From positions 168,693-232,692 of the IMG/VR virus record IMGVR_UViG_3300020471_000004: a stretch of 64,000 nt of DNA; one strand, given 5' to 3'. The translations under genes and the position numbers were made by a program. This document shows positions 29,688 to 39,355 of this stretch, piece after piece; positions within the stretch are counted from its first letter, which is position 1, and each line of letters begins with the position of its first letter. The notes beneath the pieces are model-generated. The model was not told the origin of the DNA, ran no database searches, and saw only the letters and a list, made by a program, of their open reading frames with translations.

Positions 29688-32600
29688 TTAGTTTTTCCTA
29701 TAAAAGCTATCGGTGTTATGTATTAATATAGGATTCTTACCTACATAGTAGCTGTCGTTTTCTTCTATATCTATTATAACAACGTCAATAGGATCTTTAA
29801 CACGTTCAAGAGTTCCTACGTACACTTCACGACCTTGCATATTCCACAAGTAGTCACCGATTTGAATATCTCTTACATCCATCCAATGCCAAGTGTCTTT
29901 ACGCTTTACAAAGATCTCATGCTCTTGTGTTATCTCTACATCGCCGTTTATGACCCAGTACTCTCTGAACCAATCGTGTTTAATACTTGTAACAGTACTG
30001 ATTACCTGACGGTTGCCTTCGGTGCTGGTTGTAGTCCATTCTTGCCAACCAGGAGTATTTTCGTCTATCATACCTGGGAACCAAGTAGATACAACTCTAT
30101 CTCCTACGCGAAGACGCTCTGCGTTGATAGTAGAACCGTCTTCTAGATGGACTAGTGTGCCGAAAGATACGCAGCCTCCACCGCCACCTCCAGAGTATAC
30201 CTGTGCTTTCTGCTGGATAGATACGGGTATAGGGGCACTCTTTTGTACTCCGCCTAAATCGTCTTTGACAAATATCTCTACTTCAAGGCTTGCTGTACCT
30301 GCAAGAGACGAATTGGATACTTCACGCTCGAACTGAATACTTAGGTTCAAGTTGTCAGGACTATAGACGTTATAATTAGATGACCTAGGGTCAGGTTCGT
30401 TATTTACATCGAATGCACAAAAGTTTTTGGTGCTTATTCTAGAACCAGGTATTGTGTTGTTGACAACCGTAACGTTCCACTTGTAGGTATATGTACGATT
30501 AGGGTCAAACTCAAACTGAGCAAGTAAGTTAGTAGAGTGTGCTACACCTGCTGCTTTATCATCGACACCAACCGTAGCGCTATCGGCAGTTTTACGCATA
30601 GTGAATACACTAACGTCACCGGGGCTTTCGGTATACGCGGGAGTACCTTCTCCTAGATCACCGTCTGTGGGCCAAGTCATCTCTAACTTGCTTGCATTTA
30701 TTCTAAACGCCAATATAGTTTCAGGGTGCGCGTACTTTGTAGCAGTCACCTTAGCAGTACCAATACTGGTTATAGCAGAAGTATAAACTATATTCATGTC
30801 ACCGCTAGTAGGAGCGCTAGACTCTACTATTGTTGCGATACCTTCACTGTCTAAAATTTCTCCAGCACTAGGATTAGATATAATAACCTTGAACTGCTCG
30901 TTCGGATCCTTGATGCTGTCTGAATATGTGTTAACGCTTATTGTTCCACTACCTGCACCTGCTGGTATTATTAACGTACCTGATTTAGCTTGGTAGTCTG
31001 CTTCGGTAGTAGGTATGCCTACGTTACCATCGCTGACTGTTTTAACTACCAGATTTGTCATACGAGCCGCATTTGACTGAACAGGGAGTCTAGAGTTAGC
31101 AGTATTCATTCCTGCAAATAAATAACTATCTCCTGCTTTATCAATAATAGCCTGAACACTAATACTATCAATGTTGCTTATACCTGAAACATTTGAAGTT
31201 TCGTTTACTATATTAACAACTGCCTTTAAACCAAACGCATTGATTAGGTCTTTGGCGTTAGCATTCATGTATTTGTATGGACTGCTGTACGTTTTGGTAT
31301 CTAGTGCTGCGGTCTGTACCACAACTACAGGTTCGTTGGACTTTTGTGCTGCCCTAGAAACTGCAATTGCCCAAGCAGTCGCCTGCTCTTTACCAAATAC
31401 TTTGGTACTAAAATCAGTAGCACTTGAAATATCAGAGTTTTCAGCCGCGTGTTGTCTCCACTCTCCCCACTGGTCAATGATAACAATATCGTATCGGTCA
31501 ACAATATCTTTAGGCGTGCTATAAGTACTTGACCCTGTTGTAAAGCCGTTATCTCTAGTTTCACCGTGGTCGCCAAAGTTATTTACAAAGTGAACGTCTA
31601 CTTGAATACCAAATATCTTATTCATGCTAGATACTAAGTGATCCATTCCTTTAGTAGCATGGTAAGCGACTTCATACTCTCTTTCATCTACTCTCGGATC
31701 AGGGTCATAAGGTGTTGCGTATTCAAGTATTCTTTGGTGAGATACAATAAGCATCTTGGTAGAACTTGAAAGTGTGCCTAATCTATTTTCGAAAATATTA
31801 GCAAGCATTTGGAAGTAAGGAGGTAACTCAGAGCGGTTGCTAACACTGTGATCAGTATTGCCTGAGTTATAGTTAGAGGCGTTGTAGTACCCTTGCATGT
31901 AATCAAAGTCATCTAGATCGTATAAACGACTAGGATCTGCCTCAAGAACAAGAGTATAGTTTTGGTTCTCGTCATCGTACACTACCGAACTCACAATCCC
32001 GTCTTGTCTAAACAAAGGATAAGGATTAGTAGAACCTGCAACATCACCTGCGGTACTCAGCGCTGTAATATCTTGTGTGGTGTAGTCAACACTTATGTCC
32101 TGGTCAGTAGGGTAGTTTAAGGCAACTGTGAACTTTGCAGTACTACCTTCGTTAACTCGGATAGAGTTAATGGCGATTTGAACATCAGGACACAACGGTA
32201 CTAACTGGTCATCTATTTCTATATTAAGAATAGGTACGTAACAGCCTACCCAATAAGTCCAGCTAGAATCAAGAGGGCTATCGATTCGGACACTAACGTC
32301 CTCTAAGTCATCAAAGTTAGAGGATTCTTTTAGTCTAAACCACTGTAAGAATGATGTGCCTCTACTTTTCTTGGCTGTTACAAGTTCACCGTTTTTATCA
32401 AACACACTTGCGGTATAGGTAAAATCGCCATAACCTGTTATCTTAATAGACGCAACACCGTCACCGTCAAGGGTATTCATTCGGTAATGGTCTTCGGTAC
32501 TGTAGTGACCTGCACTAGATATGCCAGCTTCTGGCATTTCACAAGGGAATCTGTTCTCTTTGTAGCCTGCTGTGTTAGGGTCGTAAAGCATATACTCCTG

Positions 32601-33797
32601 GCTAGACATATCTGCAAGGTATTCACGCTCTTGTGCCATCACTTTAACAACAATATCAGGAACAGGTGTAGCAAATCTCCAAGGGTCAAACACTATTCGG
32701 AGCAGTCCGTCGGTATTTTTGTTGCCCATTGTAGATGCAATACGTTCACCGCCGTGGTATACTTCTACCCAATCAGCATTTTCCCACGTTTCATAGTTAA
32801 GGTGTAGCACATACGGTCCCGCAGCCGGATTAACTAGACCTACTGTGTGTACGTATTCTTGCCACCACTGACCTTCTTTGAATCGGTCACTCATATAAGC
32901 CACACGGCTATGTGCAGGTGCAGGGAAAATACTGGTACCTACGTATTCCATGTTTCTTATTTGTGCTAGGTGTCTGTTGTTGCCAGGTTCAAATACAGGT
33001 AATGCCAGAACAGCTTTGGGCCCTACAACACTGTATTGCCAACGAGTCTTGTCTTCGCCTCTAACCCTGATCATTACGCGAGATTCACCAGCACCTATGT
33101 TAGGGTTAGCACCGAACTCTAGTTTACCTCTACCGAATACTCTGCCACAAGTAGAAGCAATCAAAGCTCCTAGGTAGTACACGTCAATAGAAATTCCAGT
33201 TTCAGCATAACTTGCGTAAAGTATTTCGAACTGACCTGCGGTATCTCCAGTTTCGTATATGGTTTCCGTTACCGCGCTGCCTGTGCTAAAGGTATGGGTA
33301 GACACAAAGCTAGGGTTTTCGTAGGTTCCCCTTCCGTAAAAAGAGTTGATACCTGAATTATCGTAGGTATCTTTTAGATTGTCTATACCCGGTCTATTGA
33401 TAACTTTACCTTCGTATGTACCAAAAGACTTTTCTAAACCAAAGCCTACTTGTCCTGCATCTGGTAAGTCGTAACCTGCAGGATACCCTTCAAGTATATC
33501 AAATTCTGCACCGCCTGAACCTAGACCGTTACCTGAGCCTGCATCTGTTATACTTACTGTATCGGGACAAGCTATTGAATTAAGCTGGGCTAAGTTGGCA
33601 CAGGGATCGTCAAGTGCAGGATCAAACGTACAATCTACGTCTAACCACTTGCTATTGCCAGAGTCCCTTACTTTTGTTTGAGCTGGATAAAACCTTACCC
33701 AGCTGGCATTAAAAGCATCCCGAAAATAGAATTCACTATTACATTGGTCTAACCATTGGTTATTCAAGATGTTTCTTACTGTTACGCGAACACTCAT
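29688..33797 (-). CDS. large fibre protein with split Calx-beta and C-terminal Hint domain
   Basis: repeated beta-sandwich modules, two Calx-beta halves, GGGGGG-C...TQEH...IHNT. Confidence 0.75.
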   Translation of the reverse strand: MSVRVTVRNILNNQWLDQCNSEFYFRDAFNASWVRFYPAQTKVRDSGNSKWLDVDCTFDPALDDPCANLAQLNSIACPDTVSITDAGSGNGLGSGGAEFDILEGYPAGYDLPDAGQVGFGLEKSFGTYEGKVINRPGIDNLKDTYDNSGINSFYGRGTYENPSFVSTHTFSTGSAVTETIYETGDTAGQFEILYASYAETGISIDVYYLGALIASTCGRVFGRGKLEFGANPNIGAGESRVMIRVRGEDKTRWQYSVVGPKAVLALPVFEPGNNRHLAQIRNMEYVGTSIFPAPAHSRVAYMSDRFKEGQWWQEYVHTVGLVNPAAGPYVLHLNYETWENADWVEVYHGGERIASTMGNKNTDGLLRIVFDPWRFATPVPDIVVKVMAQEREYLADMSSQEYMLYDPNTAGYKENRFPCEMPEAGISSAGHYSTEDHYRMNTLDGDGVASIKITGYGDFTYTASVFDKNGELVTAKKSRGTSFLQWFRLKESSNFDDLEDVSVRIDSPLDSSWTYWVGCYVPILNIEIDDQLVPLCPDVQIAINSIRVNEGSTAKFTVALNYPTDQDISVDYTTQDITALSTAGDVAGSTNPYPLFRQDGIVSSVVYDDENQNYTLVLEADPSRLYDLDDFDYMQGYYNASNYNSGNTDHSVSNRSELPPYFQMLANIFENRLGTLSSSTKMLIVSHQRILEYATPYDPDPRVDEREYEVAYHATKGMDHLVSSMNKIFGIQVDVHFVNNFGDHGETRDNGFTTGSSTYSTPKDIVDRYDIVIIDQWGEWRQHAAENSDISSATDFSTKVFGKEQATAWAIAVSRAAQKSNEPVVVVQTAALDTKTYSSPYKYMNANAKDLINAFGLKAVVNIVNETSNVSGISNIDSISVQAIIDKAGDSYLFAGMNTANSRLPVQSNAARMTNLVVKTVSDGNVGIPTTEADYQAKSGTLIIPAGAGSGTISVNTYSDSIKDPNEQFKVIISNPSAGEILDSEGIATIVESSAPTSGDMNIVYTSAITSIGTAKVTATKYAHPETILAFRINASKLEMTWPTDGDLGEGTPAYTESPGDVSVFTMRKTADSATVGVDDKAAGVAHSTNLLAQFEFDPNRTYTYKWNVTVVNNTIPGSRISTKNFCAFDVNNEPDPRSSNYNVYSPDNLNLSIQFEREVSNSSLAGTASLEVEIFVKDDLGGVQKSAPIPVSIQQKAQVYSGGGGGGCVSFGTLVHLEDGSTINAERLRVGDRVVSTWFPGMIDENTPGWQEWTTTSTEGNRQVISTVTSIKHDWFREYWVINGDVEITQEHEIFVKRKDTWHWMDVRDIQIGDYLWNMQGREVYVGTLERVKDPIDVVIIDIEENDSYYVGKNPILIHNTDSFYRKN
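29715..30173 (-). other. Hint (intein-like) domain, 153 aa
   Basis: CVSFGTLVHLEDG, LRVGDRV, ITQEH (TxxH), IQIGDYL, LIHN. Confidence 0.85.
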
Positions 33798-33806
33798 TAG
33801 AATACC

Positions 33807-34301
33807 TTAACTAGGTTTAATCCATAGCGCACCTGAGCCTACAGGGCCTGGGTCTTCGTTATTTATATAGATAGCAACTTTGCCGTCTAGTCCAGATATA
33901 CCTTGAGGACCTGTAGGTCCCATAGGGCCTTGTTCTCCTTGCTTACCTTCAGGTCCTCTGACTCCTCGTTCACCTACTGGACCTCTCGGACCTCTACAGC
34001 CGCGTTCACCTTGTGTGCCGCTTTCACCTATGATACCGTCTGTACCTGACGTGCCTGATACACCCTGAGGTCCTTCTTTGCCTGTACCTACATCGCTTTG
34101 TGTCATAAAGTTAGATATAGTAAGTACAGGGTAACCAGGTATGCTAAGTGTTAAAGTACCACTTATGTTATCGAATGTTCCTGAAAGTTCGGTTGCTTGT
34201 GTTTCTTCGGTAGTTACCACAAGCCCTTTGCCTGTGTTAGACACGTTGCCTGAGCTACTTCCACCATCAATCATGTTTAAAAAAGGTTTAACGATACTCA
34301 T
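33807..34301 (-). CDS. collagen-like protein
   Basis: G-X-Y repeats; C-terminal DPG.VGSGALW. Confidence 0.8.
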   Translation of the reverse strand: MSIVKPFLNMIDGGSSSGNVSNTGKGLVVTTEETQATELSGTFDNISGTLTLSIPGYPVLTISNFMTQSDVGTGKEGPQGVSGTSGTDGIIGESGTQGERGCRGPRGPVGERGVRGPEGKQGEQGPMGPTGPQGISGLDGKVAIYINNEDPGPVGSGALWIKPS

Positions 34302-34309
34302 ACTCTACC

Positions 34310-34948
34310 TCATACGAATTGATCTGTGTCATCTTCATATTGACCTATTGCAGGGTTAACCCATATAGCACCTGGGCCTATTCCAGAACCAGGATCAGTT
34401 TCAGATATGACAATATTAATATTTCCAGCTGGGCCTTGAGGACCAATAGGGCCAGTAGGGCCTGTATCTCCAGTCGGGCCTGTAGGTCCTGTTTCACCTT
34501 TGGGACCTTGCTCTCCTTGAGGACCTCTTTCTCCCATAGGTCCTGCACATCCTGCAGGGCCCGGAGGGCCTACTTGTCCTGGTCTACCGTTTTGACCGTC
34601 TTCACCTTTAGGGCCTGTAGGTCCGATAGGGCCTGCGCACCCTTCGTCTCCTACTTCACCGTCACGACCGTCACGACCATCTTGTCCGTCTTCACCTGGG
34701 TCACCTTGTGGTCCTTGCTGCCCTTCTGGTATACTATCAAATGTAGGAAATCCTGAAATAACAACTTCTTGACCATTAGCGAAACTTAAGGTAAGTACTC
34801 CGCTACCTATGTCATACGAGCCGCCTTCGATTTCACTTACATTTGAGGACACTTCGCTAGAAGTAGCAAGCTTACCTGATTCTACTACTACGGTATTCCC
34901 GTTAGAACCGGCTGCTTTTACCATGTTTAGTGAGGGTTTAGTTAACAT
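34310..34948 (-). CDS. collagen-like protein
   Basis: about 30 G-X-Y triplets; C-terminal DPGSGIGPGAIW; GAGG SD. Confidence 0.8.
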   Translation of the reverse strand: MLTKPSLNMVKAAGSNGNTVVVESGKLATSSEVSSNVSEIEGGSYDIGSGVLTLSFANGQEVVISGFPTFDSIPEGQQGPQGDPGEDGQDGRDGRDGEVGDEGCAGPIGPTGPKGEDGQNGRPGQVGPPGPAGCAGPMGERGPQGEQGPKGETGPTGPTGDTGPTGPIGPQGPAGNINIVISETDPGSGIGPGAIWVNPAIGQYEDDTDQFV

Positions 34949-34955
34949 ATTTTCC

Positions 34956-35417
34956 TCAGCTTATCTTGTTATGTACAAGTACGTTGTTCAAAAAGAACGT
35001 GTCGTACAGGTCAACTGTTACTTCGTAAGTCTGACAATTAGCTTCTATAAAAAGGTTAGACTCGACTTGTATTACCGAGTCTTTGCCGAATAGTTTATCC
35101 CCAGTCACTATTTGATGCGGAAACTTCCACTGCCAGTACCCAGCTCTTTGAGTAAGGATAGGTTGGTCTTTTACAAAGTGCATAGTATTAATTTTGTAGT
35201 AGCCTGTTCTGATAAACGTTTCTTTTAAAACAACTTCAACGTCTACTACTTTACCAGCGATATTACGTGTTGCCCAATCTATCGCAAATTCTTCGTTTCC
35301 GAATCGAGAGCTTGGCATAGCACTGATACGCAAACCTGTTATTTTGTCACCCACAGATATGTCAATGGCATTTCGGGGATGAAAGTCGGAACCTATATAA
35401 GCTATTTGCTTTATCAT
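34956..35417 (-). CDS. stand-alone degenerate Hint-like protein
   Basis: AIDISVGDKI, WQW...IVTGDKL, TYEVTVD..DTFFLNNVLVHN; no Cys1 or TxxH. Confidence 0.7.
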   Translation of the reverse strand: MIKQIAYIGSDFHPRNAIDISVGDKITGLRISAMPSSRFGNEEFAIDWATRNIAGKVVDVEVVLKETFIRTGYYKINTMHFVKDQPILTQRAGYWQWKFPHQIVTGDKLFGKDSVIQVESNLFIEANCQTYEVTVDLYDTFFLNNVLVHNKIS

Positions 35418-36934
35418 TAGTATTTAACCGTTTGCGTTGTGTTATGAACAACTATAGGAGTCTGTCCTGCAAAATAGTTATCGTTAGGCTCTGCATCAAG
35501 AACAACTACGTTTACAGGACCTTCGTTGAATACAATGCTGCTGACTTCGACTTCTCTATCTACTCCCATAAGTAAATCACCTTCTTTCAATTCAGATGCA
35601 TCTAACCATTGCCACTGTGTGCCTTGTTTGGCAAAAACAGGGTGCTTGTCGGTAATTACTACATCGTTGTTGATAGTCCAAGATTTTGAATAAGATGCCT
35701 TAAATGCTACTTTAATTCGAGTAGCTGCGACCTTTCCGTTTTTAAGTTCAGTAGTTTTCCAATCTTGCCAACCTTGTTCTGATTCATCTAACAGACCGTC
35801 ACAAGTATAGCTTTGAACCGAATCTCCTACTCTAACGTATTTGGCTTTTTTGGTAGTACCGTCCCACATAAGAACAGGAGTGTCTTCGTGCAAGCAACCA
35901 CCTCCGCCTACTACAACACCTCCGCCGCCTCCGCCTACAGGGCCTGTATCGACTCTTCGGTTAAAGCCTGAAAACGAAAATATAATATTATCTATTACTT
36001 TACGTTCAGTACTGTTCTTATCAGTGATTGTTACTTTCATTTTGCCTTTGTATTCGTAAGTATCTTGAGGCGCAATGGTTCGCAACATACTCAAACGAAT
36101 AGAGTTTGCGGTTGTTTGGCTTTCTACTACCAGACCAGGTACATCCCAGCTTCCATCGATAGGTTCCCATTTGTATGTAAAGGGCCCGACACCGCCACTC
36201 AGGTTTCTAACAACCAGTGTAGCAATACCGCTAAAAGAATCGTTTACCATTTCGGCAAGTTCGATATGTTGATTGTTAACACTAGCTGTAAGTTCTTCGA
36301 TTTCTTGCTCTTCAGGAACGTCTACAGCGACACCTGCAGGAGCAGCCCACAAAAAGAAACTTGAGTCAGGAGTAGAAGTGCCGTAATACACAGACTCTTT
36401 AGGAGTTTCACCTGTAGGCCCTTGAGGTCCTACAATACAGCTAGGTCCTTGCGGGCCCATAGGCCCTTGGTCTCCGACTTGACCTCGTATGCCTGTATCA
36501 CCACGAGGTCCTACTCCTCCCGGGCATCCATACTTACCTATGACACCTATCTTTCCGTCTTCGCCTTCTAGTCCTGCTATACCTTGTTCACCTGTAGGCC
36601 CTATAGGTCCTTCACATCCAGTTTTACCTTTCTTACCGTCACGACCTACTCTTCCGTTCTTGCCGTTACGACCTCGAGGGCCTTTTATTCCCCGAGGTCC
36701 CTCACCAAAGAAAGTCTGAGTCATGAAGCCTGATATAGAAACTATTTCACCGTTAGCTCTAACAAGGTTAAGCGAGCCTAGCTTTTTATTAAAGCCTACT
36801 TGAACCACAAGCCTTTTGCTGATAGGTTCTTCTGCACTATACTCGATAGAGCGGTTTATTTCGTTTGCTTTTAAGCTTGTGCCTTCTTGATTTGCATTGG
36901 GTACAAAGCTTTTGATACTAGCTTCTTGTGCCAT
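35417..36934 (-). CDS. collagen-like fibre protein with Ig-like and C-terminal Hint domain
   Basis: G-X-Y region, GGVGPFTYKW module, GGGG-CLHEDT...TDKH...VVHNT. Confidence 0.8.
   Translation of the reverse strand: MAQEASIKSFVPNANQEGTSLKANEINRSIEYSAEEPISKRLVVQVGFNKKLGSLNLVRANGEIVSISGFMTQTFFGEGPRGIKGPRGRNGKNGRVGRDGKKGKTGCEGPIGPTGEQGIAGLEGEDGKIGVIGKYGCPGGVGPRGDTGIRGQVGDQGPMGPQGPSCIVGPQGPTGETPKESVYYGTSTPDSSFFLWAAPAGVAVDVPEEQEIEELTASVNNQHIELAEMVNDSFSGIATLVVRNLSGGVGPFTYKWEPIDGSWDVPGLVVESQTTANSIRLSMLRTIAPQDTYEYKGKMKVTITDKNSTERKVIDNIIFSFSGFNRRVDTGPVGGGGGGVVVGGGGCLHEDTPVLMWDGTTKKAKYVRVGDSVQSYTCDGLLDESEQGWQDWKTTELKNGKVAATRIKVAFKASYSKSWTINNDVVITDKHPVFAKQGTQWQWLDASELKEGDLLMGVDREVEVSSIVFNEGPVNVVVLDAEPNDNYFAGQTPIVVHNTTQTVKY
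35441..35896 (-). other. Hint (intein-like) domain, 152 aa
   Basis: CLHEDTPVLMWDG, VRVGDSV, ITDKH, LKEGDLL, VVHN. Confidence 0.85.
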
Positions 36935-36937
36935 ACC

Positions 36938-39355
36938 TTACCTCAATTTAGGATTCACTTCAATATTAAGGTTAACAGTCAGGTCACTACCATAGTCACT
37001 TATTCTGCCGTTGCGTACACGCATCTTGGCAACAACGTCAATAAATCCGCTGGGGTTGTTGGCTTTTATAACTGACCAACCTTGGGTTATTGATTTGTCT
37101 GCATACGCATAAGTACCTTGACGGGTAGGATCTGTTACGTTAAACCCTGCTGAACCTGTACCCTTTATGTTGCGCCCGTATTCAGGTTCATTAACACTAT
37201 GGGTTTTATAACCTAAAACAAAGTCAATGTTTTCTAGTCCGTCCTCTGATGCGAAACCTGGACCTAATCTAGCAGAAAAATCTGCGGTAGCTTTTACTAA
37301 CACGTCACCTTTGAAATTTATACGCTGGGTATAAATGATTTCTTCGGTGTTCTTTTGTCTGCTTTGGTTGTTGAAGATTTGAGGACTGTCTTTTGCTATT
37401 TGTTGGCTTAATGTGCTGCTAACTGTATAGTCAGGGAACGTACCTGTAACTTTAATACCGTCTCCTGATTCTATATTGAATCGGGGAACAGGCATGATTA
37501 TAGGCTCGGCATTGTGACGGATAAGCTTTATGCTTTTGGATGTAACAATGCTATCTGTTATTACGCCGCTTATAGAGTTATCTGGCGTACCTTGTGACAA
37601 AACATTTCGGAATATCTGTACTTCGATAGAGTGATCAGGGTCAATGTCACGTTTGAATATAAGTCGGTTATCAACAACATCGAATAGAGAGCGATTAACA
37701 TGCATACCTTGTTCAGAAACAAACACTAAACCTTTTTCTTGAGGAGCAAAAGGTAACTGTAATACCTTCGTTAGGTCCCTAGTCAAATAGTTTTGAGTAT
37801 GGATGTGTGTTGCGTATCCTTGTACCTCTTGAGTAACGAAAGCATTTATTTCAACACGTAGACCTTGAATAGGCGGTGTAGTAAACACAATCTTTTGACG
37901 TTCAGTATCTACAGTGTACGTGTTAATAGACTGCATAAAGCTATCTATGTAAACAATGAGGTCACTAGAAAGAGAAACAGTCTCTTCCCCTTGTACAGGT
38001 ATATCGAACTCTGTTTGCGAACCGTCTGCAACTGTTTCAGCATATCGAATATTCAAGTATGCACCAGTGCTAGGTGTAAGAGAAAACAAACGAGCATCTA
38101 CTTGCACTTCACTAGGTAAGTCTTCTGCAAACTCTATTTGGTTTTCTTTTATTTCAAATGCTTCACGATGCTGAGTAATACCACTAAGCGCAACCATTGA
38201 GTAGTTGTCGTTAGAAGTATGGGAATAATGATGTATTTGAGATTTTTGAGAAGTTGCCTGTGATAAATCTTTTTGGTACAGCACGAAAGTTCTTATGCCT
38301 GCACTGTCTTCAGGTGCAATAACATAAGCATTCATTTTCAAAGTACCAGGCGGGTGATAAAGAACACTGCCGTTACCGTTAGCTTTTAAAGGAGGTACCC
38401 AGCGCGGATATTCTATTCCTCTTTCTAGAACATAGTTGCTAGGTACCCCGTCAAGGCCCGGCAGACCAGCAGCACCAAGATTACCGTGGCGAGGGTACCA
38501 GATATTTATAACGCTGGTATCGCTTAGGTCGCTGAATGCGCTAGCGGTAGCAATATAAGCAATGTTATCGCCGTTCTGGGTAGCGGTAAAGCGTCGCGTC
38601 TCTCCCGCCCCCGTACCGCTTACTACTTGGACAATAACAACATCGCCAGCTTCAACATCAGCCGTCTCGGTAGCCTCAGGCTGCTTAAACTCAGAAGGGT
38701 CATACACATTCTCGAAACCTACTTCACCGTTGAATATTCGAGTATGTCCGCTGAAAGACCACTGAGCTCCGCCGGGCCCAAACTTCTGAACAATACCAGG
38801 TGAATTGCTATTGTCCAGGTTTGTTTCCAAATCTTGTACTGCAATCGCGTTAGCAATAGCTGTAACAGGACTTGGTAAATCTTCAATACTCATAACAGCA
38901 GGTATTGAACCGTATTCTGAATGAGTAACATCAATATTTTGTGCGTTGCCTTCTTTTATGTGAAGACTTGCATCTATACGCATGCCTTCACCGTTACGTT
39001 TGGTAAAAGGTTGCGCATAAACACAATGACCAATTACGGTATTGTCTTCTAGCATAATAACAAGTTCGCCGATAGCTACGCTAGAGCCTTCGGTAGCAGG
39101 AACACTAGTCGGTATGTCAAACGTAAACCGCACAGTGTTTTCAGAAAGAACCTGAATGTATTGAATCTTTCCTTGGTGAACAGTAGTTGAAACCAAGTTT
39201 TCAGGAATGCCTTCTTGTTCGTAAAAATCTTCTACGTCGGAAACTTCTAGGTTACCTACTTTGAAATATTTAGGTGCTACTAGAATTCCACCGCTATCTG
39301 CATTTAGCAAAGCTTGAGAGCCTGCTGGTGTTAGATGTATAATATCAGGTGTCAT
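36938..39355 (-). CDS. baseplate / tail-fibre attachment protein
   Basis: N-terminus LTPAGSQALLNA is like tail-collar fibre proteins; repeated small beta modules. Confidence 0.6.
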   Translation of the reverse strand: MTPDIIHLTPAGSQALLNADSGGILVAPKYFKVGNLEVSDVEDFYEQEGIPENLVSTTVHQGKIQYIQVLSENTVRFTFDIPTSVPATEGSSVAIGELVIMLEDNTVIGHCVYAQPFTKRNGEGMRIDASLHIKEGNAQNIDVTHSEYGSIPAVMSIEDLPSPVTAIANAIAVQDLETNLDNSNSPGIVQKFGPGGAQWSFSGHTRIFNGEVGFENVYDPSEFKQPEATETADVEAGDVVIVQVVSGTGAGETRRFTATQNGDNIAYIATASAFSDLSDTSVINIWYPRHGNLGAAGLPGLDGVPSNYVLERGIEYPRWVPPLKANGNGSVLYHPPGTLKMNAYVIAPEDSAGIRTFVLYQKDLSQATSQKSQIHHYSHTSNDNYSMVALSGITQHREAFEIKENQIEFAEDLPSEVQVDARLFSLTPSTGAYLNIRYAETVADGSQTEFDIPVQGEETVSLSSDLIVYIDSFMQSINTYTVDTERQKIVFTTPPIQGLRVEINAFVTQEVQGYATHIHTQNYLTRDLTKVLQLPFAPQEKGLVFVSEQGMHVNRSLFDVVDNRLIFKRDIDPDHSIEVQIFRNVLSQGTPDNSISGVITDSIVTSKSIKLIRHNAEPIIMPVPRFNIESGDGIKVTGTFPDYTVSSTLSQQIAKDSPQIFNNQSRQKNTEEIIYTQRINFKGDVLVKATADFSARLGPGFASEDGLENIDFVLGYKTHSVNEPEYGRNIKGTGSAGFNVTDPTRQGTYAYADKSITQGWSVIKANNPSGFIDVVAKMRVRNGRISDYGSDLTVNLNIEVNPKLR

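What the first reader, a model, noticed from the sequence alone, without database searches (positions are those of the whole stretch)
34956..35417. Stand-alone, catalytically stripped Hint-like gene coupled to a Hint-fibre gene
Seen: a 153-aa ORF translationally coupled (TAATG) to the 505-aa Hint fibre. It keeps VGDKI, WQW, TGDKL and DTFF.NNVLVHN but has no Cys1 or first strand, has VKDQ in place of TxxH, and has Lys after HN. It has an intact frame and coupling rather than signs of decay. Inference: the Hint fold has a non-catalytic role here, for example as an oligomerisation partner or regulator of the two active modules, or as the third chain of a heterotrimer.
Basis: partly seen in the sequence, partly recalled or inferred. 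Interest (0 to 1): 0.62.

Follow-up and report, generated by a model that had tools for sequence, protein, structure and literature searches.

The report
Dead stand-alone Hint gene in phage fibre cluster
A marine jumbo phage carries a small, well-conserved gene for a complete self-cleaving "Hint" protein fold that has lost its catalytic residues; it sits among collagen-like fibre genes and probably serves as a non-enzymatic helper or fibre part, with its partner still unknown.

Summary
The 153-aa ORF at 34956-35417 (-) is real. Its ATG overlaps the TAA of the 505-aa collagen+Hint fibre gene (TAATG), and contigs from four public runs read identically across that junction. An AlphaFold2 model (pLDDT 95.4) is a complete Hint fold. 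Its closest solved structures are BIL domains, mini-inteins and Hedgehog HhC (Z about 16, rmsd 1.7-2.1 A). The block B Thr and His and the block F Asp are also gone. The terminal HN is kept here but lost in four of nine relatives.

The ORF belongs to a monophyletic stand-alone family found in at least ten marine phage lineages, including Phage NCTB, always between the Hint-bearing fibre gene and a 211-214-aa collagen-like gene. Two independent close pairs give dN/dS of 0.14 and 0.12. The family occurs only where both the fibre and the ~1370-aa protein carry catalytic-looking Hints. Sister lineages have none.

My reading is a pseudo-enzyme kept as a non-catalytic accessory of the fibre module. 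No partner was identified. A lead pointing to the neighbour's acidic tail was refuted, and the one complex prediction gave no verdict. It is a new variant of a known kind and of moderate interest.

The parts
34956..35417 (-). Stand-alone 153-aa gene for a complete Hint fold lacking the catalytic residues (SA)
   Evidence: ORF. AlphaFold2 pLDDT 95.4, pTM 0.89. Foldseek and VIA best matches are BIL domains, mini-inteins and Hedgehog HhC, Z 16.7. Family alignments A3 and A4. dN/dS 0.144 against L003, Fisher p 9e-8.
35415..35419 (-). TAATG: the stop of the 505-aa fibre gene overlaps the start of the stand-alone gene by one base
   Evidence: Sequence. No Shine-Dalgarno-like run lies upstream. The same overlap is present in L003, L022, L023 and Phage NCTB. 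In other lineages the gap is +1 to +27 nt.
35417..36934 (-). 505-aa fibre protein: N-terminal domain, collagen repeats, middle beta domain, poly-Gly, C-terminal Hint
   Evidence: Pfam Collagen E 7e-14 and weak PT-HINT/Vint/Hint hits. phrog_38766 E 5e-55.
35420..35896 (-). Fused Hint domain of the 505-aa fibre (Cys347 after GGGG, ITDKHP, LDAE, VVHN-T)
   Evidence: Alignments. Cys1, TxxH, the block F Asp and HN are kept in all relatives.
34953..34958 (-). TGA stop of the stand-alone gene, overlapping the GAGGA ribosome-binding site of the 212-aa gene (ATG at 34948)
   Evidence: Sequence. In five other lineages the stand-alone gene's 3' end overlaps the next gene's start by 10-11 nt.
34310..34948 (-). 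212-aa collagen-like protein with the acidic C-terminal tail GQYEDDTDQFV
   Evidence: Pfam Collagen E 1e-17. Tail comparison.
33807..34301 (-). 164-aa collagen-like protein
   Evidence: Pfam Collagen E 5e-11.
29688..33797 (-). 1369-aa protein (phrog_26008 N-terminal half, Calx-beta) ending in poly-Gly plus a Hint domain
   Evidence: The Hint spans 29691-30173 (Cys1209, ITQEHE, IDIE, LIHN-T).
36938..39355 (-). 805-aa fibre-module protein upstream (phrog_21488; weak tail-fibre N-terminal similarity)
   Evidence: It is syntenic in all related loci.

Best explanation
The ORF is a functional gene for a full-length Hint (Hedgehog/intein, BIL-type) domain that can no longer catalyse. It is a pseudo-enzyme paralogue of the autoprocessing domains found at the C-termini of the neighbouring 505-aa fibre and the 1369-aa protein.

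Shown:
- The fold is a complete Hint fold.
- The nucleophile (Cys1), the block B Thr and His, and the block F Asp are lost.
- The stand-alone proteins form one old, vertically inherited family.
- The family is under purifying selection.
- The gene has a fixed place in the module: fibre-Hint, stand-alone gene, 212-aa collagen-like, 164-aa collagen-like, then the big Hint-bearing protein. It is tightly spaced or overlapping on both sides.

Inferred:
- The protein is made in step with the fibre proteins. In this phage that would be by termination-reinitiation at TAATG.
- It acts without chemistry, as an accessory of the collagen-like fibre module. It could be an assembly or processing factor, or a retained fibre subunit.
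- It most likely works through the remodelled former active-site cleft. That is where the family-specific conserved residues lie (Met1-x-Lys3-Gln4, Phe81/Gln85, Asn144), going by the known positions of intein blocks A, B and F/G.
- Its most likely clients are the two Hint-bearing proteins, because it occurs only where both exist.
For: Fold:
- AlphaFold2 pLDDT 95.4, with strands from residue 5.
- Foldseek best match is the C. thermocellum BIL domain, E 2e-6.
- VIA gives Z 16.7, rmsd 1.7 A over 129 residues to Tetrahymena BIL2, and Z about 15 to HhC and mini-inteins. These alignments span model residues 1-153.

Loss of catalytic residues:
- Alignments A4. His to Gln85 in 7 of 10 family members, Thr to Val/Gly/Pro, and the block F Asp and Glu not kept.
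- HN is replaced by YT/YA/YS in 4 of 9 members.

Family:
- The full HMMER search found stand-alone members of 150-157 aa, all starting M-x-[KTR]-Q.
- The tree gives one clade at 100/99 support, with branching that mirrors the neighbouring genes.

Context:
- The layout is identical in NCTB, L003, L008, L010, L013, L014, L016, L022 and L023.

Selection:
- dN/dS 0.144 (13 nonsynonymous against 21 synonymous differences, Fisher p 9e-8) and 0.118.
- These values are similar to the catalytic fibre Hint, at 0.17 and 0.08.

Family-specific conserved residues.

Co-occurrence with a big-protein Hint:
- Both present in all seven lineages where both could be read.
- Both absent in Alexandravirus, L018 and L020.
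Against: - There is no direct evidence that the protein is made. No RNA run holds the region, and no proteomics is available.
- No partner is identified. The one complex prediction gave no verdict.
- It is the fastest-evolving part of the module. Mean pairwise identity is 0.31, against 0.39 for the fibre Hint and 0.68 for the 212-aa protein. That fits relaxed constraint as well as it fits a host-facing or adaptor role.
- Sister lineages build the same module without it, so it is not essential to this kind of fibre.
- The co-occurrence with the big-protein Hint may be one evolutionary event.
- The placement of conserved residues in the cleft is inferred from block homology. It was not measured on coordinates.
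Confidence: 0.6

Rival explanations
1. SA physically pairs with the catalytic Hint domains of the 505-aa and 1369-aa proteins, as a heterodimer or heterotrimer. In that way it regulates or times their self-cleavage, or brings the two proteins together.
For: - SA is found only in genomes where both proteins carry catalytic-type Hints.
- It is absent where the big protein lacks one.
- It is co-translated with the fibre Hint.
- Pseudo-enzymes often act on their active paralogues (general knowledge).
Against: - This was not tested directly.
- SA lies on a long branch away from both catalytic Hints.
- Hint domains are not known to need partners for cis cleavage (general knowledge of inteins, BIL and Hedgehog HhC).
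- The co-occurrence may be a single event.
Confidence: 0.25
2. SA is a structural virion protein, a distal knob or adhesin carried by one of the collagen-like fibres. This would be analogous to T2 gp38, which sits on the tip of gp37.
For: - It sits directly downstream of a fibre gene and is tightly coupled to the next fibre gene.
- It is the most variable member of the module, as fibre tips usually are.
Against: - It has no similarity to known adhesins or fibre chaperones. Pfam and PHROGs return only Hint-type hits.
- dN/dS of 0.12-0.14 gives no sign of diversifying selection at gene level.
- There are no proteomic data.
Confidence: 0.15
3. SA is a functionless remnant of a tandem duplication of the fibre's Hint domain and is slowly decaying.
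For: - All catalytic residues are lost.
- It is the fastest-evolving part of the module.
- It is absent from sister lineages.
- A separately derived, degenerate stand-alone Hint-like ORF in L020 may be such a remnant.
Against: - The frame is intact at 150-157 aa in at least ten lineages, down to about 23-25% identity.
- dN/dS is 0.14 (p 9e-8) and 0.12.
- The start motif and gene overlaps are conserved.
- The AlphaFold2 model is of very high confidence.
Confidence: 0.05
4. SA is the large fragment of a split Hint or intein. Another protein supplies the missing N-terminal piece with the Cys, restoring catalysis in trans, as in atypical split inteins such as VidaL or AceL-TerL.
For:
- Structures of the VidaL and AceL split inteins appear among the fold matches.
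Against: - The fold is complete from residue 1, so only two residues are missing.
- The block B Thr and His and the block F Asp are also gone, and HN is not conserved.
- Neither collagen-like neighbour (212 aa, 164 aa) ends in a Cys-bearing Hint start.
Confidence: 0.02

Closest known systems
Phage NCTB BN7874_135 'intein domain protein' (LT598654.1; UniProt A0A1C3NFC5)
   Same: It is the orthologue. It is 153 aa, 42% identical, in an identical position with a TAATG-type overlap. The predicted structures match at TM 0.93.
   Different: It is only a database annotation, with no study found. The label 'intein' is misleading, because the gene is not inserted in a host protein and lacks the splicing residues.
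Bacterial intein-like (BIL) domains: C. thermocellum BIL (2LWY) and Tetrahymena BUBL BIL2 (6Y75/6TMM)
   Same: These are the best structural matches: Z 15.9-16.7, rmsd 1.7 A, about 125-129 aligned residues, covering the whole domain.
   Different: BIL domains are embedded in larger proteins and use an N-terminal Cys/Ser, TxxH and usually a terminal Asn to cleave or ligate. SA is free-standing and lacks these residues.
Pretoxin-HINT (PF07591) and the fused Hint domains of this phage's own 505-aa and 1369-aa proteins (phrog_38766 C-terminus)
   Same: These are the closest sequence relatives: PT-HINT E 0.02 (best family member 2.6e-4), phrog_38766 E 4.5e-10, and about 20-23% identity to the window's fused Hints.
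   Different: All hits fall below Pfam's gathering score. The fused domains keep Cys1 after poly-Gly, TxxH, the block F Asp and HN. SA forms a separate clade on a long branch.
Hedgehog C-terminal autoprocessing domain (HhC; 1AT0, 6TYY)
   Same: Same fold (Z 15.5). The fused Hints here resemble it in following a Gly-Cys junction at the end of a secreted or structural 'cargo'.
   Different: HhC is catalytic and transfers cholesterol. SA has no nucleophile and no cargo.
Small genes downstream of phage tail-fibre genes (Tfa chaperones, T4/T2 gp38)
   Same: Same genomic logic: a small ORF coupled to a fibre gene.
   Different: No sequence or fold relationship. SA is a Hint fold.

Membership tests
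Hint (Hedgehog/intein) fold superfamily | Horseshoe-like all-beta Hint fold covering the whole domain | tested here: met
   AlphaFold2 pLDDT 95.4. Z 16.7 to BIL2, and 15-16 to HhC and mini-inteins, spanning model residues 1-153. 40 PDB matches at E<=1e-3; every one of those listed is an intein, BIL or Hedgehog structure.
Catalytic Hint modules (inteins, BIL, HhC) | Block A nucleophile (Cys/Ser/Thr) at position 1 | tested here: not met
   Met1 aligns one to two residues after Cys1. No family member has Cys/Ser/Thr at position 1 or 2.
Catalytic Hint modules (inteins, BIL, HhC) | Block B Thr-x-x-His | tested here: not met
   V82-K-D-Q85 stands in place of T-D-K-H. The Thr column is Val in 4 and Gly in 3 of 10 members, with Ile and Pro also seen; the His column is Gln in 7, Tyr in 2 and Leu in 1.
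Catalytic Hint modules (inteins, BIL, HhC) | Block F Asp (LDxE in the fused relatives) | tested here: not met
   The Asp column is variable in the stand-alone family (Lys, Glu, Thr and Leu among the residues seen), whereas 33 of 41 fused domains keep Asp.
Catalytic Hint modules (inteins, BIL, HhC) | Block G penultimate His and terminal Asn | tested here: inconclusive
   HN is present in the window, NCTB, L016, L022 and L010. It is replaced by YT/YA/YS in four lineages, so it is not a family requirement.
Intein (protein-splicing element) | Inserted in frame within a host protein, with a +1 Cys/Ser/Thr on the C-extein | tested here: not met
   It is a free-standing ORF with its own start and stop, and the frame upstream is closed. 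The residue after HN is Lys. Even the fused Hints have a non-conserved +1 residue (T, A, I, N, Q or L).
Split intein fragment | An incomplete fold that needs a complementary fragment carrying the missing strands | tested here: not met
   The fold is complete from residue 1. Neither collagen-like neighbour ends in a Cys-bearing Hint start.
Pfam PT-HINT (PF07591) | Score at or above the gathering threshold of 27.7 bits | tested here: not met
   15.6 bits, E 0.02. Only 4 of 9 family members match at E<=1, the best at 2.6e-4.
Stand-alone Hint-like family defined here (NCTB BN7874_135-like) | 150-157 aa, start M-x-[KTR]-Q, no catalytic blocks, located between the fibre-Hint gene and the 211-214-aa collagen-like gene | tested here: met
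   Alignment A3, clade support 100/99, contexts.
Phage tail-fibre assembly chaperones (Tfa, gp38-like) | Homology to known chaperone families | tested here: not met
   Pfam and PHROGs return no chaperone families. Only the gene position is similar.

The most novel reading that the evidence does not exclude
A Hint domain that has given up catalysis has been re-used as a free-standing binding module that works with self-cleaving fibre proteins. For example, it might hold the poly-Gly end exposed by cleavage, take the place of the departed catalytic Hint on the mature fibre, or gate the timing of cleavage of the two catalytic Hints. I know of no described non-enzymatic, trans-acting member of the Hedgehog/intein superfamily with a role in virion assembly.
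Probability: 0.2. Interest if true: 0.7.

Novelty: new variant of a known kind. Interest (0 to 1): 0.45.

Why it matters
The Hint fold is known almost only as a single-turnover self-processing enzyme, in inteins, BIL domains, Hedgehog and pretoxin-HINT. This gene is different. It is a free-standing copy that has lost every conserved catalytic position, yet it is kept under purifying selection, at a fixed place in a fibre gene cluster, across at least ten lineages of marine jumbo phages.

If its partner can be found, it would show what a Hint scaffold can do apart from chemistry. It would also help explain why these phages end their collagen-like fibres and a 1370-aa structural protein with poly-Gly plus Hint.

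There is a practical point too. The database label 'intein domain protein' on the NCTB orthologue is misleading. The fused 'inteins' of these phages also lack a conserved +1 nucleophile, so they look like cleavage modules rather than splicing elements.

Tried and rejected
1. Complex prediction of SA with the C-terminal 48 residues of the 212-aa protein. The verdict was 'no answer' (score 0.02, mark 0.34) and the controls were not run. This is no evidence for or against binding.

2. Lead: the acidic tail GQ[YF][DE]DDx[DE]QF of the 212-aa protein might be SA's ligand.
- The tail was present in all eight SA-bearing loci then in hand, and absent from two SA-less lineages.
- The lead was rejected after wider sampling. 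L018 (tail GQVDADLDQFFG) and L019 (tail IDQYVFDRDQFV) have tail-type ends, but a six-frame HMM search found no SA in either locus.

3. Frameshift or read-through fusion of SA to the fibre.
- The SA frame has a stop three codons before its ATG.
- Gene spacing varies from -1 to +27 nt among lineages.
- I saw an A-run upstream of the start in NCTB only, and did not test whether it could promote slippage.

4. Split-intein reading: rejected. See the rival explanations.

5. Scans of IMG/VR for relatives, using the SA alignment and the big-protein alignment, found nothing.

6. Megablast of the region against the phage collection found no match.

7. A sequence search of the PDB gave only chance-level hits.

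8. P0005, a 1460-aa cadherin-like repeat protein, was a spurious low-complexity hit in the big search.

9. Promoter and terminator scans were at or below the shuffled expectation.

10. Literature searches found no description of this family or of non-catalytic stand-alone Hint proteins in phage fibres.

11. No RNA run holds the region, so expression could not be checked.

Full report
**What is there**

The window is part of a 232,692-base IMG/VR virus record, estimated 93% complete. Near-identical contigs occur in marine and coral-reef metagenomes from several studies.

On the minus strand a tight run of structural genes reads as follows:
- a 1615-aa protein;
- an 805-aa protein (phrog_21488);
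- a 505-aa protein with an N-terminal domain, collagen repeats, a middle beta domain, poly-Gly and a Hint domain;
- the 153-aa ORF of the finding;
- a 212-aa collagen-like protein;
- a 164-aa collagen-like protein;
- a 1369-aa protein (phrog_26008 half, Calx-beta) that again ends in poly-Gly plus Hint.

The 153-aa ORF (SA, for stand-alone) starts at an ATG that shares its A with the TAA of the 505-aa gene. I see no Shine-Dalgarno-like run upstream of it. Its TGA stop overlaps the GAGGA ribosome-binding site of the 212-aa gene. The SA frame is closed three codons upstream of the ATG. Contigs from four public runs in three studies read identically across the ORF and the junction, with no indels.

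**Checking the observation**

SA aligns with both fused Hint domains at about 23% identity. Sequence evidence for homology:
- phrog_38766 C-terminal part, E 4.5e-10;
- the window's own 505-aa Hint, E 1.2e-7;
- Pfam PT-HINT only at E 0.02, below the gathering score.

An AlphaFold2 model built on a 38-sequence alignment has mean pLDDT 95.4 and pTM 0.89. Foldseek's significant PDB matches, as listed, are all inteins, BIL domains and Hedgehog HhC. VIA-align gives Z 16.7, rmsd 1.7 A over 129 residues to Tetrahymena BIL2, and Z about 15-16 to the C. thermocellum BIL domain, HhC and mini-inteins.

The first strand is not missing.
- The model has a strand at residues 5-8.
- Model residue 1 pairs with residue 3 of the solved Hint domains.
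- In the larger alignments Met1 falls one to two columns after Cys1.

The domain is therefore complete. It starts just past the point where a fused Hint would be cut from its cargo.

**What has been lost**

The losses are set against 41 fused relatives:
- SA lacks the Cys.
- The block B Thr is replaced by Val, Gly, Pro or Ile across the family.
- The block B His is replaced by Gln in 7 of 10 members.
- The block F Asp and Glu are not kept.
- The terminal His-Asn is kept in this phage but replaced by YT, YA or YS in four of nine family members.

No conserved catalytic residue survives across the family. By contrast, the fused Hints of the 505-aa and 1369-aa proteins keep all of these residues in every relative: Cys1 after poly-Gly, TxxH, the block F Asp and HN.

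The residue after HN in the fused Hints is not conserved. It is T, A, I, N, Q or L. They therefore look like BIL/Hedgehog-type cleavage modules rather than splicing inteins.

**A family, not a one-off**

The word-based search found only a 92% identical copy. The exhaustive HMMER search found 74 relatives. Among them is a set of 150-157-aa proteins that all begin M-x-[K/T/R]-Q and share the same losses.

Their contigs show the same gene order wherever enough DNA is available: an ~810-aa protein, the 500-512-aa collagen+Hint fibre, SA, a 211-214-aa collagen-like protein, a 156-168-aa collagen-like protein, then a ~1304-1389-aa protein ending in a Hint. The loci include Phage NCTB, whose SA is annotated 'intein domain protein', a 182-kb TARA contig and two ~243-kb genomes.

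The distance from the fibre stop to the SA start is -1 nt in six loci and +1 to +27 nt in the others. The SA end overlaps the next gene's start by 10-11 nt in five lineages.

In a maximum-likelihood tree the stand-alone proteins form one clade (100/99 support) on a long branch. Their internal branching mirrors that of the neighbouring genes. The fibre and big-protein Hints of the same phages fall together in another clade (98/95). So SA is old and vertically inherited.

**Selection**

| Comparison | SA dN/dS | Fibre Hint dN/dS |
|---|---|---|
| Window vs L003 (92% aa identity) | 0.144 | 0.17 |
| L022 vs L023 | 0.118 | 0.08 |

The window/L003 value rests on 13 nonsynonymous and 21 synonymous differences, with Fisher p 9e-8.

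Over longer distances SA is the fastest-changing part of the module. Mean pairwise identities across six lineages:

| Component | Mean pairwise identity |
|---|---|
| SA | 0.31 |
| Fibre Hint | 0.39 |
| Big-protein Hint | 0.54 |
| 212-aa protein | 0.68 |

Even so, the frame and length are kept throughout. The gene is maintained.

**Where it is absent**

| Lineage | Stand-alone gene | Big protein |
|---|---|---|
| Alexandravirus (Erwinia phages) | none; fibre+Hint is followed directly by the collagen-like gene | 672 aa, no Hint |
| L017 | none | not readable (contig ends) |
| L019 | none | end not in the locus |
| L018 | none | ends in poly-Gly with no Hint |

In all seven lineages where both features could be read, SA and a Hint on the big protein occur together. 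This is the only evidence that links SA to the catalytic modules, and it may reflect a single ancestral burst of Hint duplication.

L020 is a separate case. There a fibre-like gene without a fused Hint is followed, in the same frame, by TGA, then a Cys codon, then an ATG. That ATG opens a 140-aa degenerate Hint-like ORF. This ORF scores better against the fused-Hint profile (40.6 bits) than against the SA profile (27.8 bits). It looks like an independent split of a fused Hint, and it shows one way such genes can arise.

**Mechanism**

Shown:
- a complete Hint fold;
- loss of the catalytic residues;
- purifying selection;
- a fixed, coupled place in the fibre module.

Inferred:
- It works without chemistry, as an accessory of the collagen-like fibre module.
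- The residues conserved in SA but different in fused Hints are Met1, Lys3, Gln4, Gly40, Ala49, Gly72, Phe81 and Asn144, plus Gln85 in place of the His. Several fall in blocks A, B and F/G.
- In solved inteins those blocks line the active-site cleft (established knowledge). This suggests the cleft was remodelled rather than abandoned.

I could not measure this on coordinates, and I could not identify the partner. My own lead was that the acidic C-terminal tail of the 212-aa protein is the ligand. It failed when tail-bearing lineages without SA turned up. The one complex prediction returned no verdict and is recorded only under Tried and rejected.

I rate it at about 0.25. I rate the tip-subunit reading at about 0.15, decay at about 0.05 and a split-intein reading at about 0.02.

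**Comparison with what is known, and novelty**

Structurally SA is closest to BIL domains. By sequence it is closest to the PT-HINT-like domains of its own phage group. It fails the tests for a catalytic Hint, an intein and a split intein. It meets only the fold test.

Its orthologue in Phage NCTB is already in GenBank under a misleading name. Small Hint-fold ORFs of 128-151 aa also exist in other phages according to BFVD. I found no paper describing this family or any non-catalytic stand-alone Hint in a fibre module.

I class it as a new variant of a known kind.

Noticed in passing
window 29691-30173 and 35420-35896 (-); L001, L008, L010, L013, L014, L016: The residue after the terminal His-Asn of the fused Hint domains is not conserved (T, A, I, N, Q or L), and only 5-10 residues follow it. 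They look like BIL/Hedgehog-type cleavage modules at a poly-Gly|Cys junction, not splicing inteins as the Phage NCTB annotation says.
   Followed up: partly
L020:1225-1672: A fibre-like gene with no fused Hint ends ...TGC GGG TGA. In the same frame TGT (Cys) and ATG follow, opening a 140-aa degenerate Hint-like ORF. That ORF scores better against the fused-Hint profile than the stand-alone profile. TGA is a normal stop elsewhere in the locus. It appears to be an independent split of a fused Hint.
   Followed up: partly
L018:5204-8572: In a lineage without the stand-alone gene, the homologue of the 1369-aa protein (1122 aa) ends ...SGGGGGGGGDGPSGVVF. It keeps the poly-Gly run but has no Hint after it.
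   Followed up: no
window 34310-34948 (-), residues about 200-212; P0077-P0087: The 212-aa collagen-like protein carries a conserved acidic C-terminal tail ([IL][GD]Q[YFIV]xxDxDQF) in many lineages, while others end ...DQGTTWP or similar. It does not track the stand-alone gene. Its role is unknown.
   Followed up: partly
window 33807-36934 (-): The 505-, 212- and 164-aa proteins share an N-terminal ~70-aa domain (...G.LTL...G....ISGF). Each has a Cys in a G-x-x-G-C-x-G-P collagen triplet, also present in the Alexandravirus homologues. They could form a heterotrimeric collagen helix or three related homotrimers.
   Followed up: no
L008, L010, L012, L013, L014 (stand-alone gene end / next gene start): In five lineages the last 10-11 nt of the stand-alone gene overlap the start of the next gene; in four of them the shared DNA reads ATG[CT]TAACTA[AG]. 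This fixes the C-terminal residues of the stand-alone protein as ...(A/V)N in those four.
   Followed up: partly
window 34300-37000: Near-identical DNA (shares of sampled words 0.47-0.87) is present in marine and coral-reef metagenome runs from several studies, and more distant copies in wastewater, estuary and shark-associated samples. The phage group appears to be marine and widespread. No host is known.
   Followed up: partly
window 35058-35082 (-): A terminator-like hairpin (9 pairs, then a T-rich tail) lies inside the stand-alone gene. The number of such sites in the region is at the shuffled expectation, so it is probably chance.
   Followed up: no
BFVD hits A0A218MLH4, A0A1S5RCV4, A0A8S5P792, A0A8S5TV04, A0A8S5VRF6: Other phages encode small (128-151 aa) proteins predicted to have a Hint fold. 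Whether they are catalytic, split or dead was not examined.
   Followed up: no
P0021 (309 aa) and other multi-stretch hits: Natural tandem Hint-Hint proteins exist, for example ...ILVHNIPPKCFVAGT.... This layout is what the fibre Hint plus the stand-alone gene would resemble if they were fused, and it fits an origin by tandem duplication.
   Followed up: no
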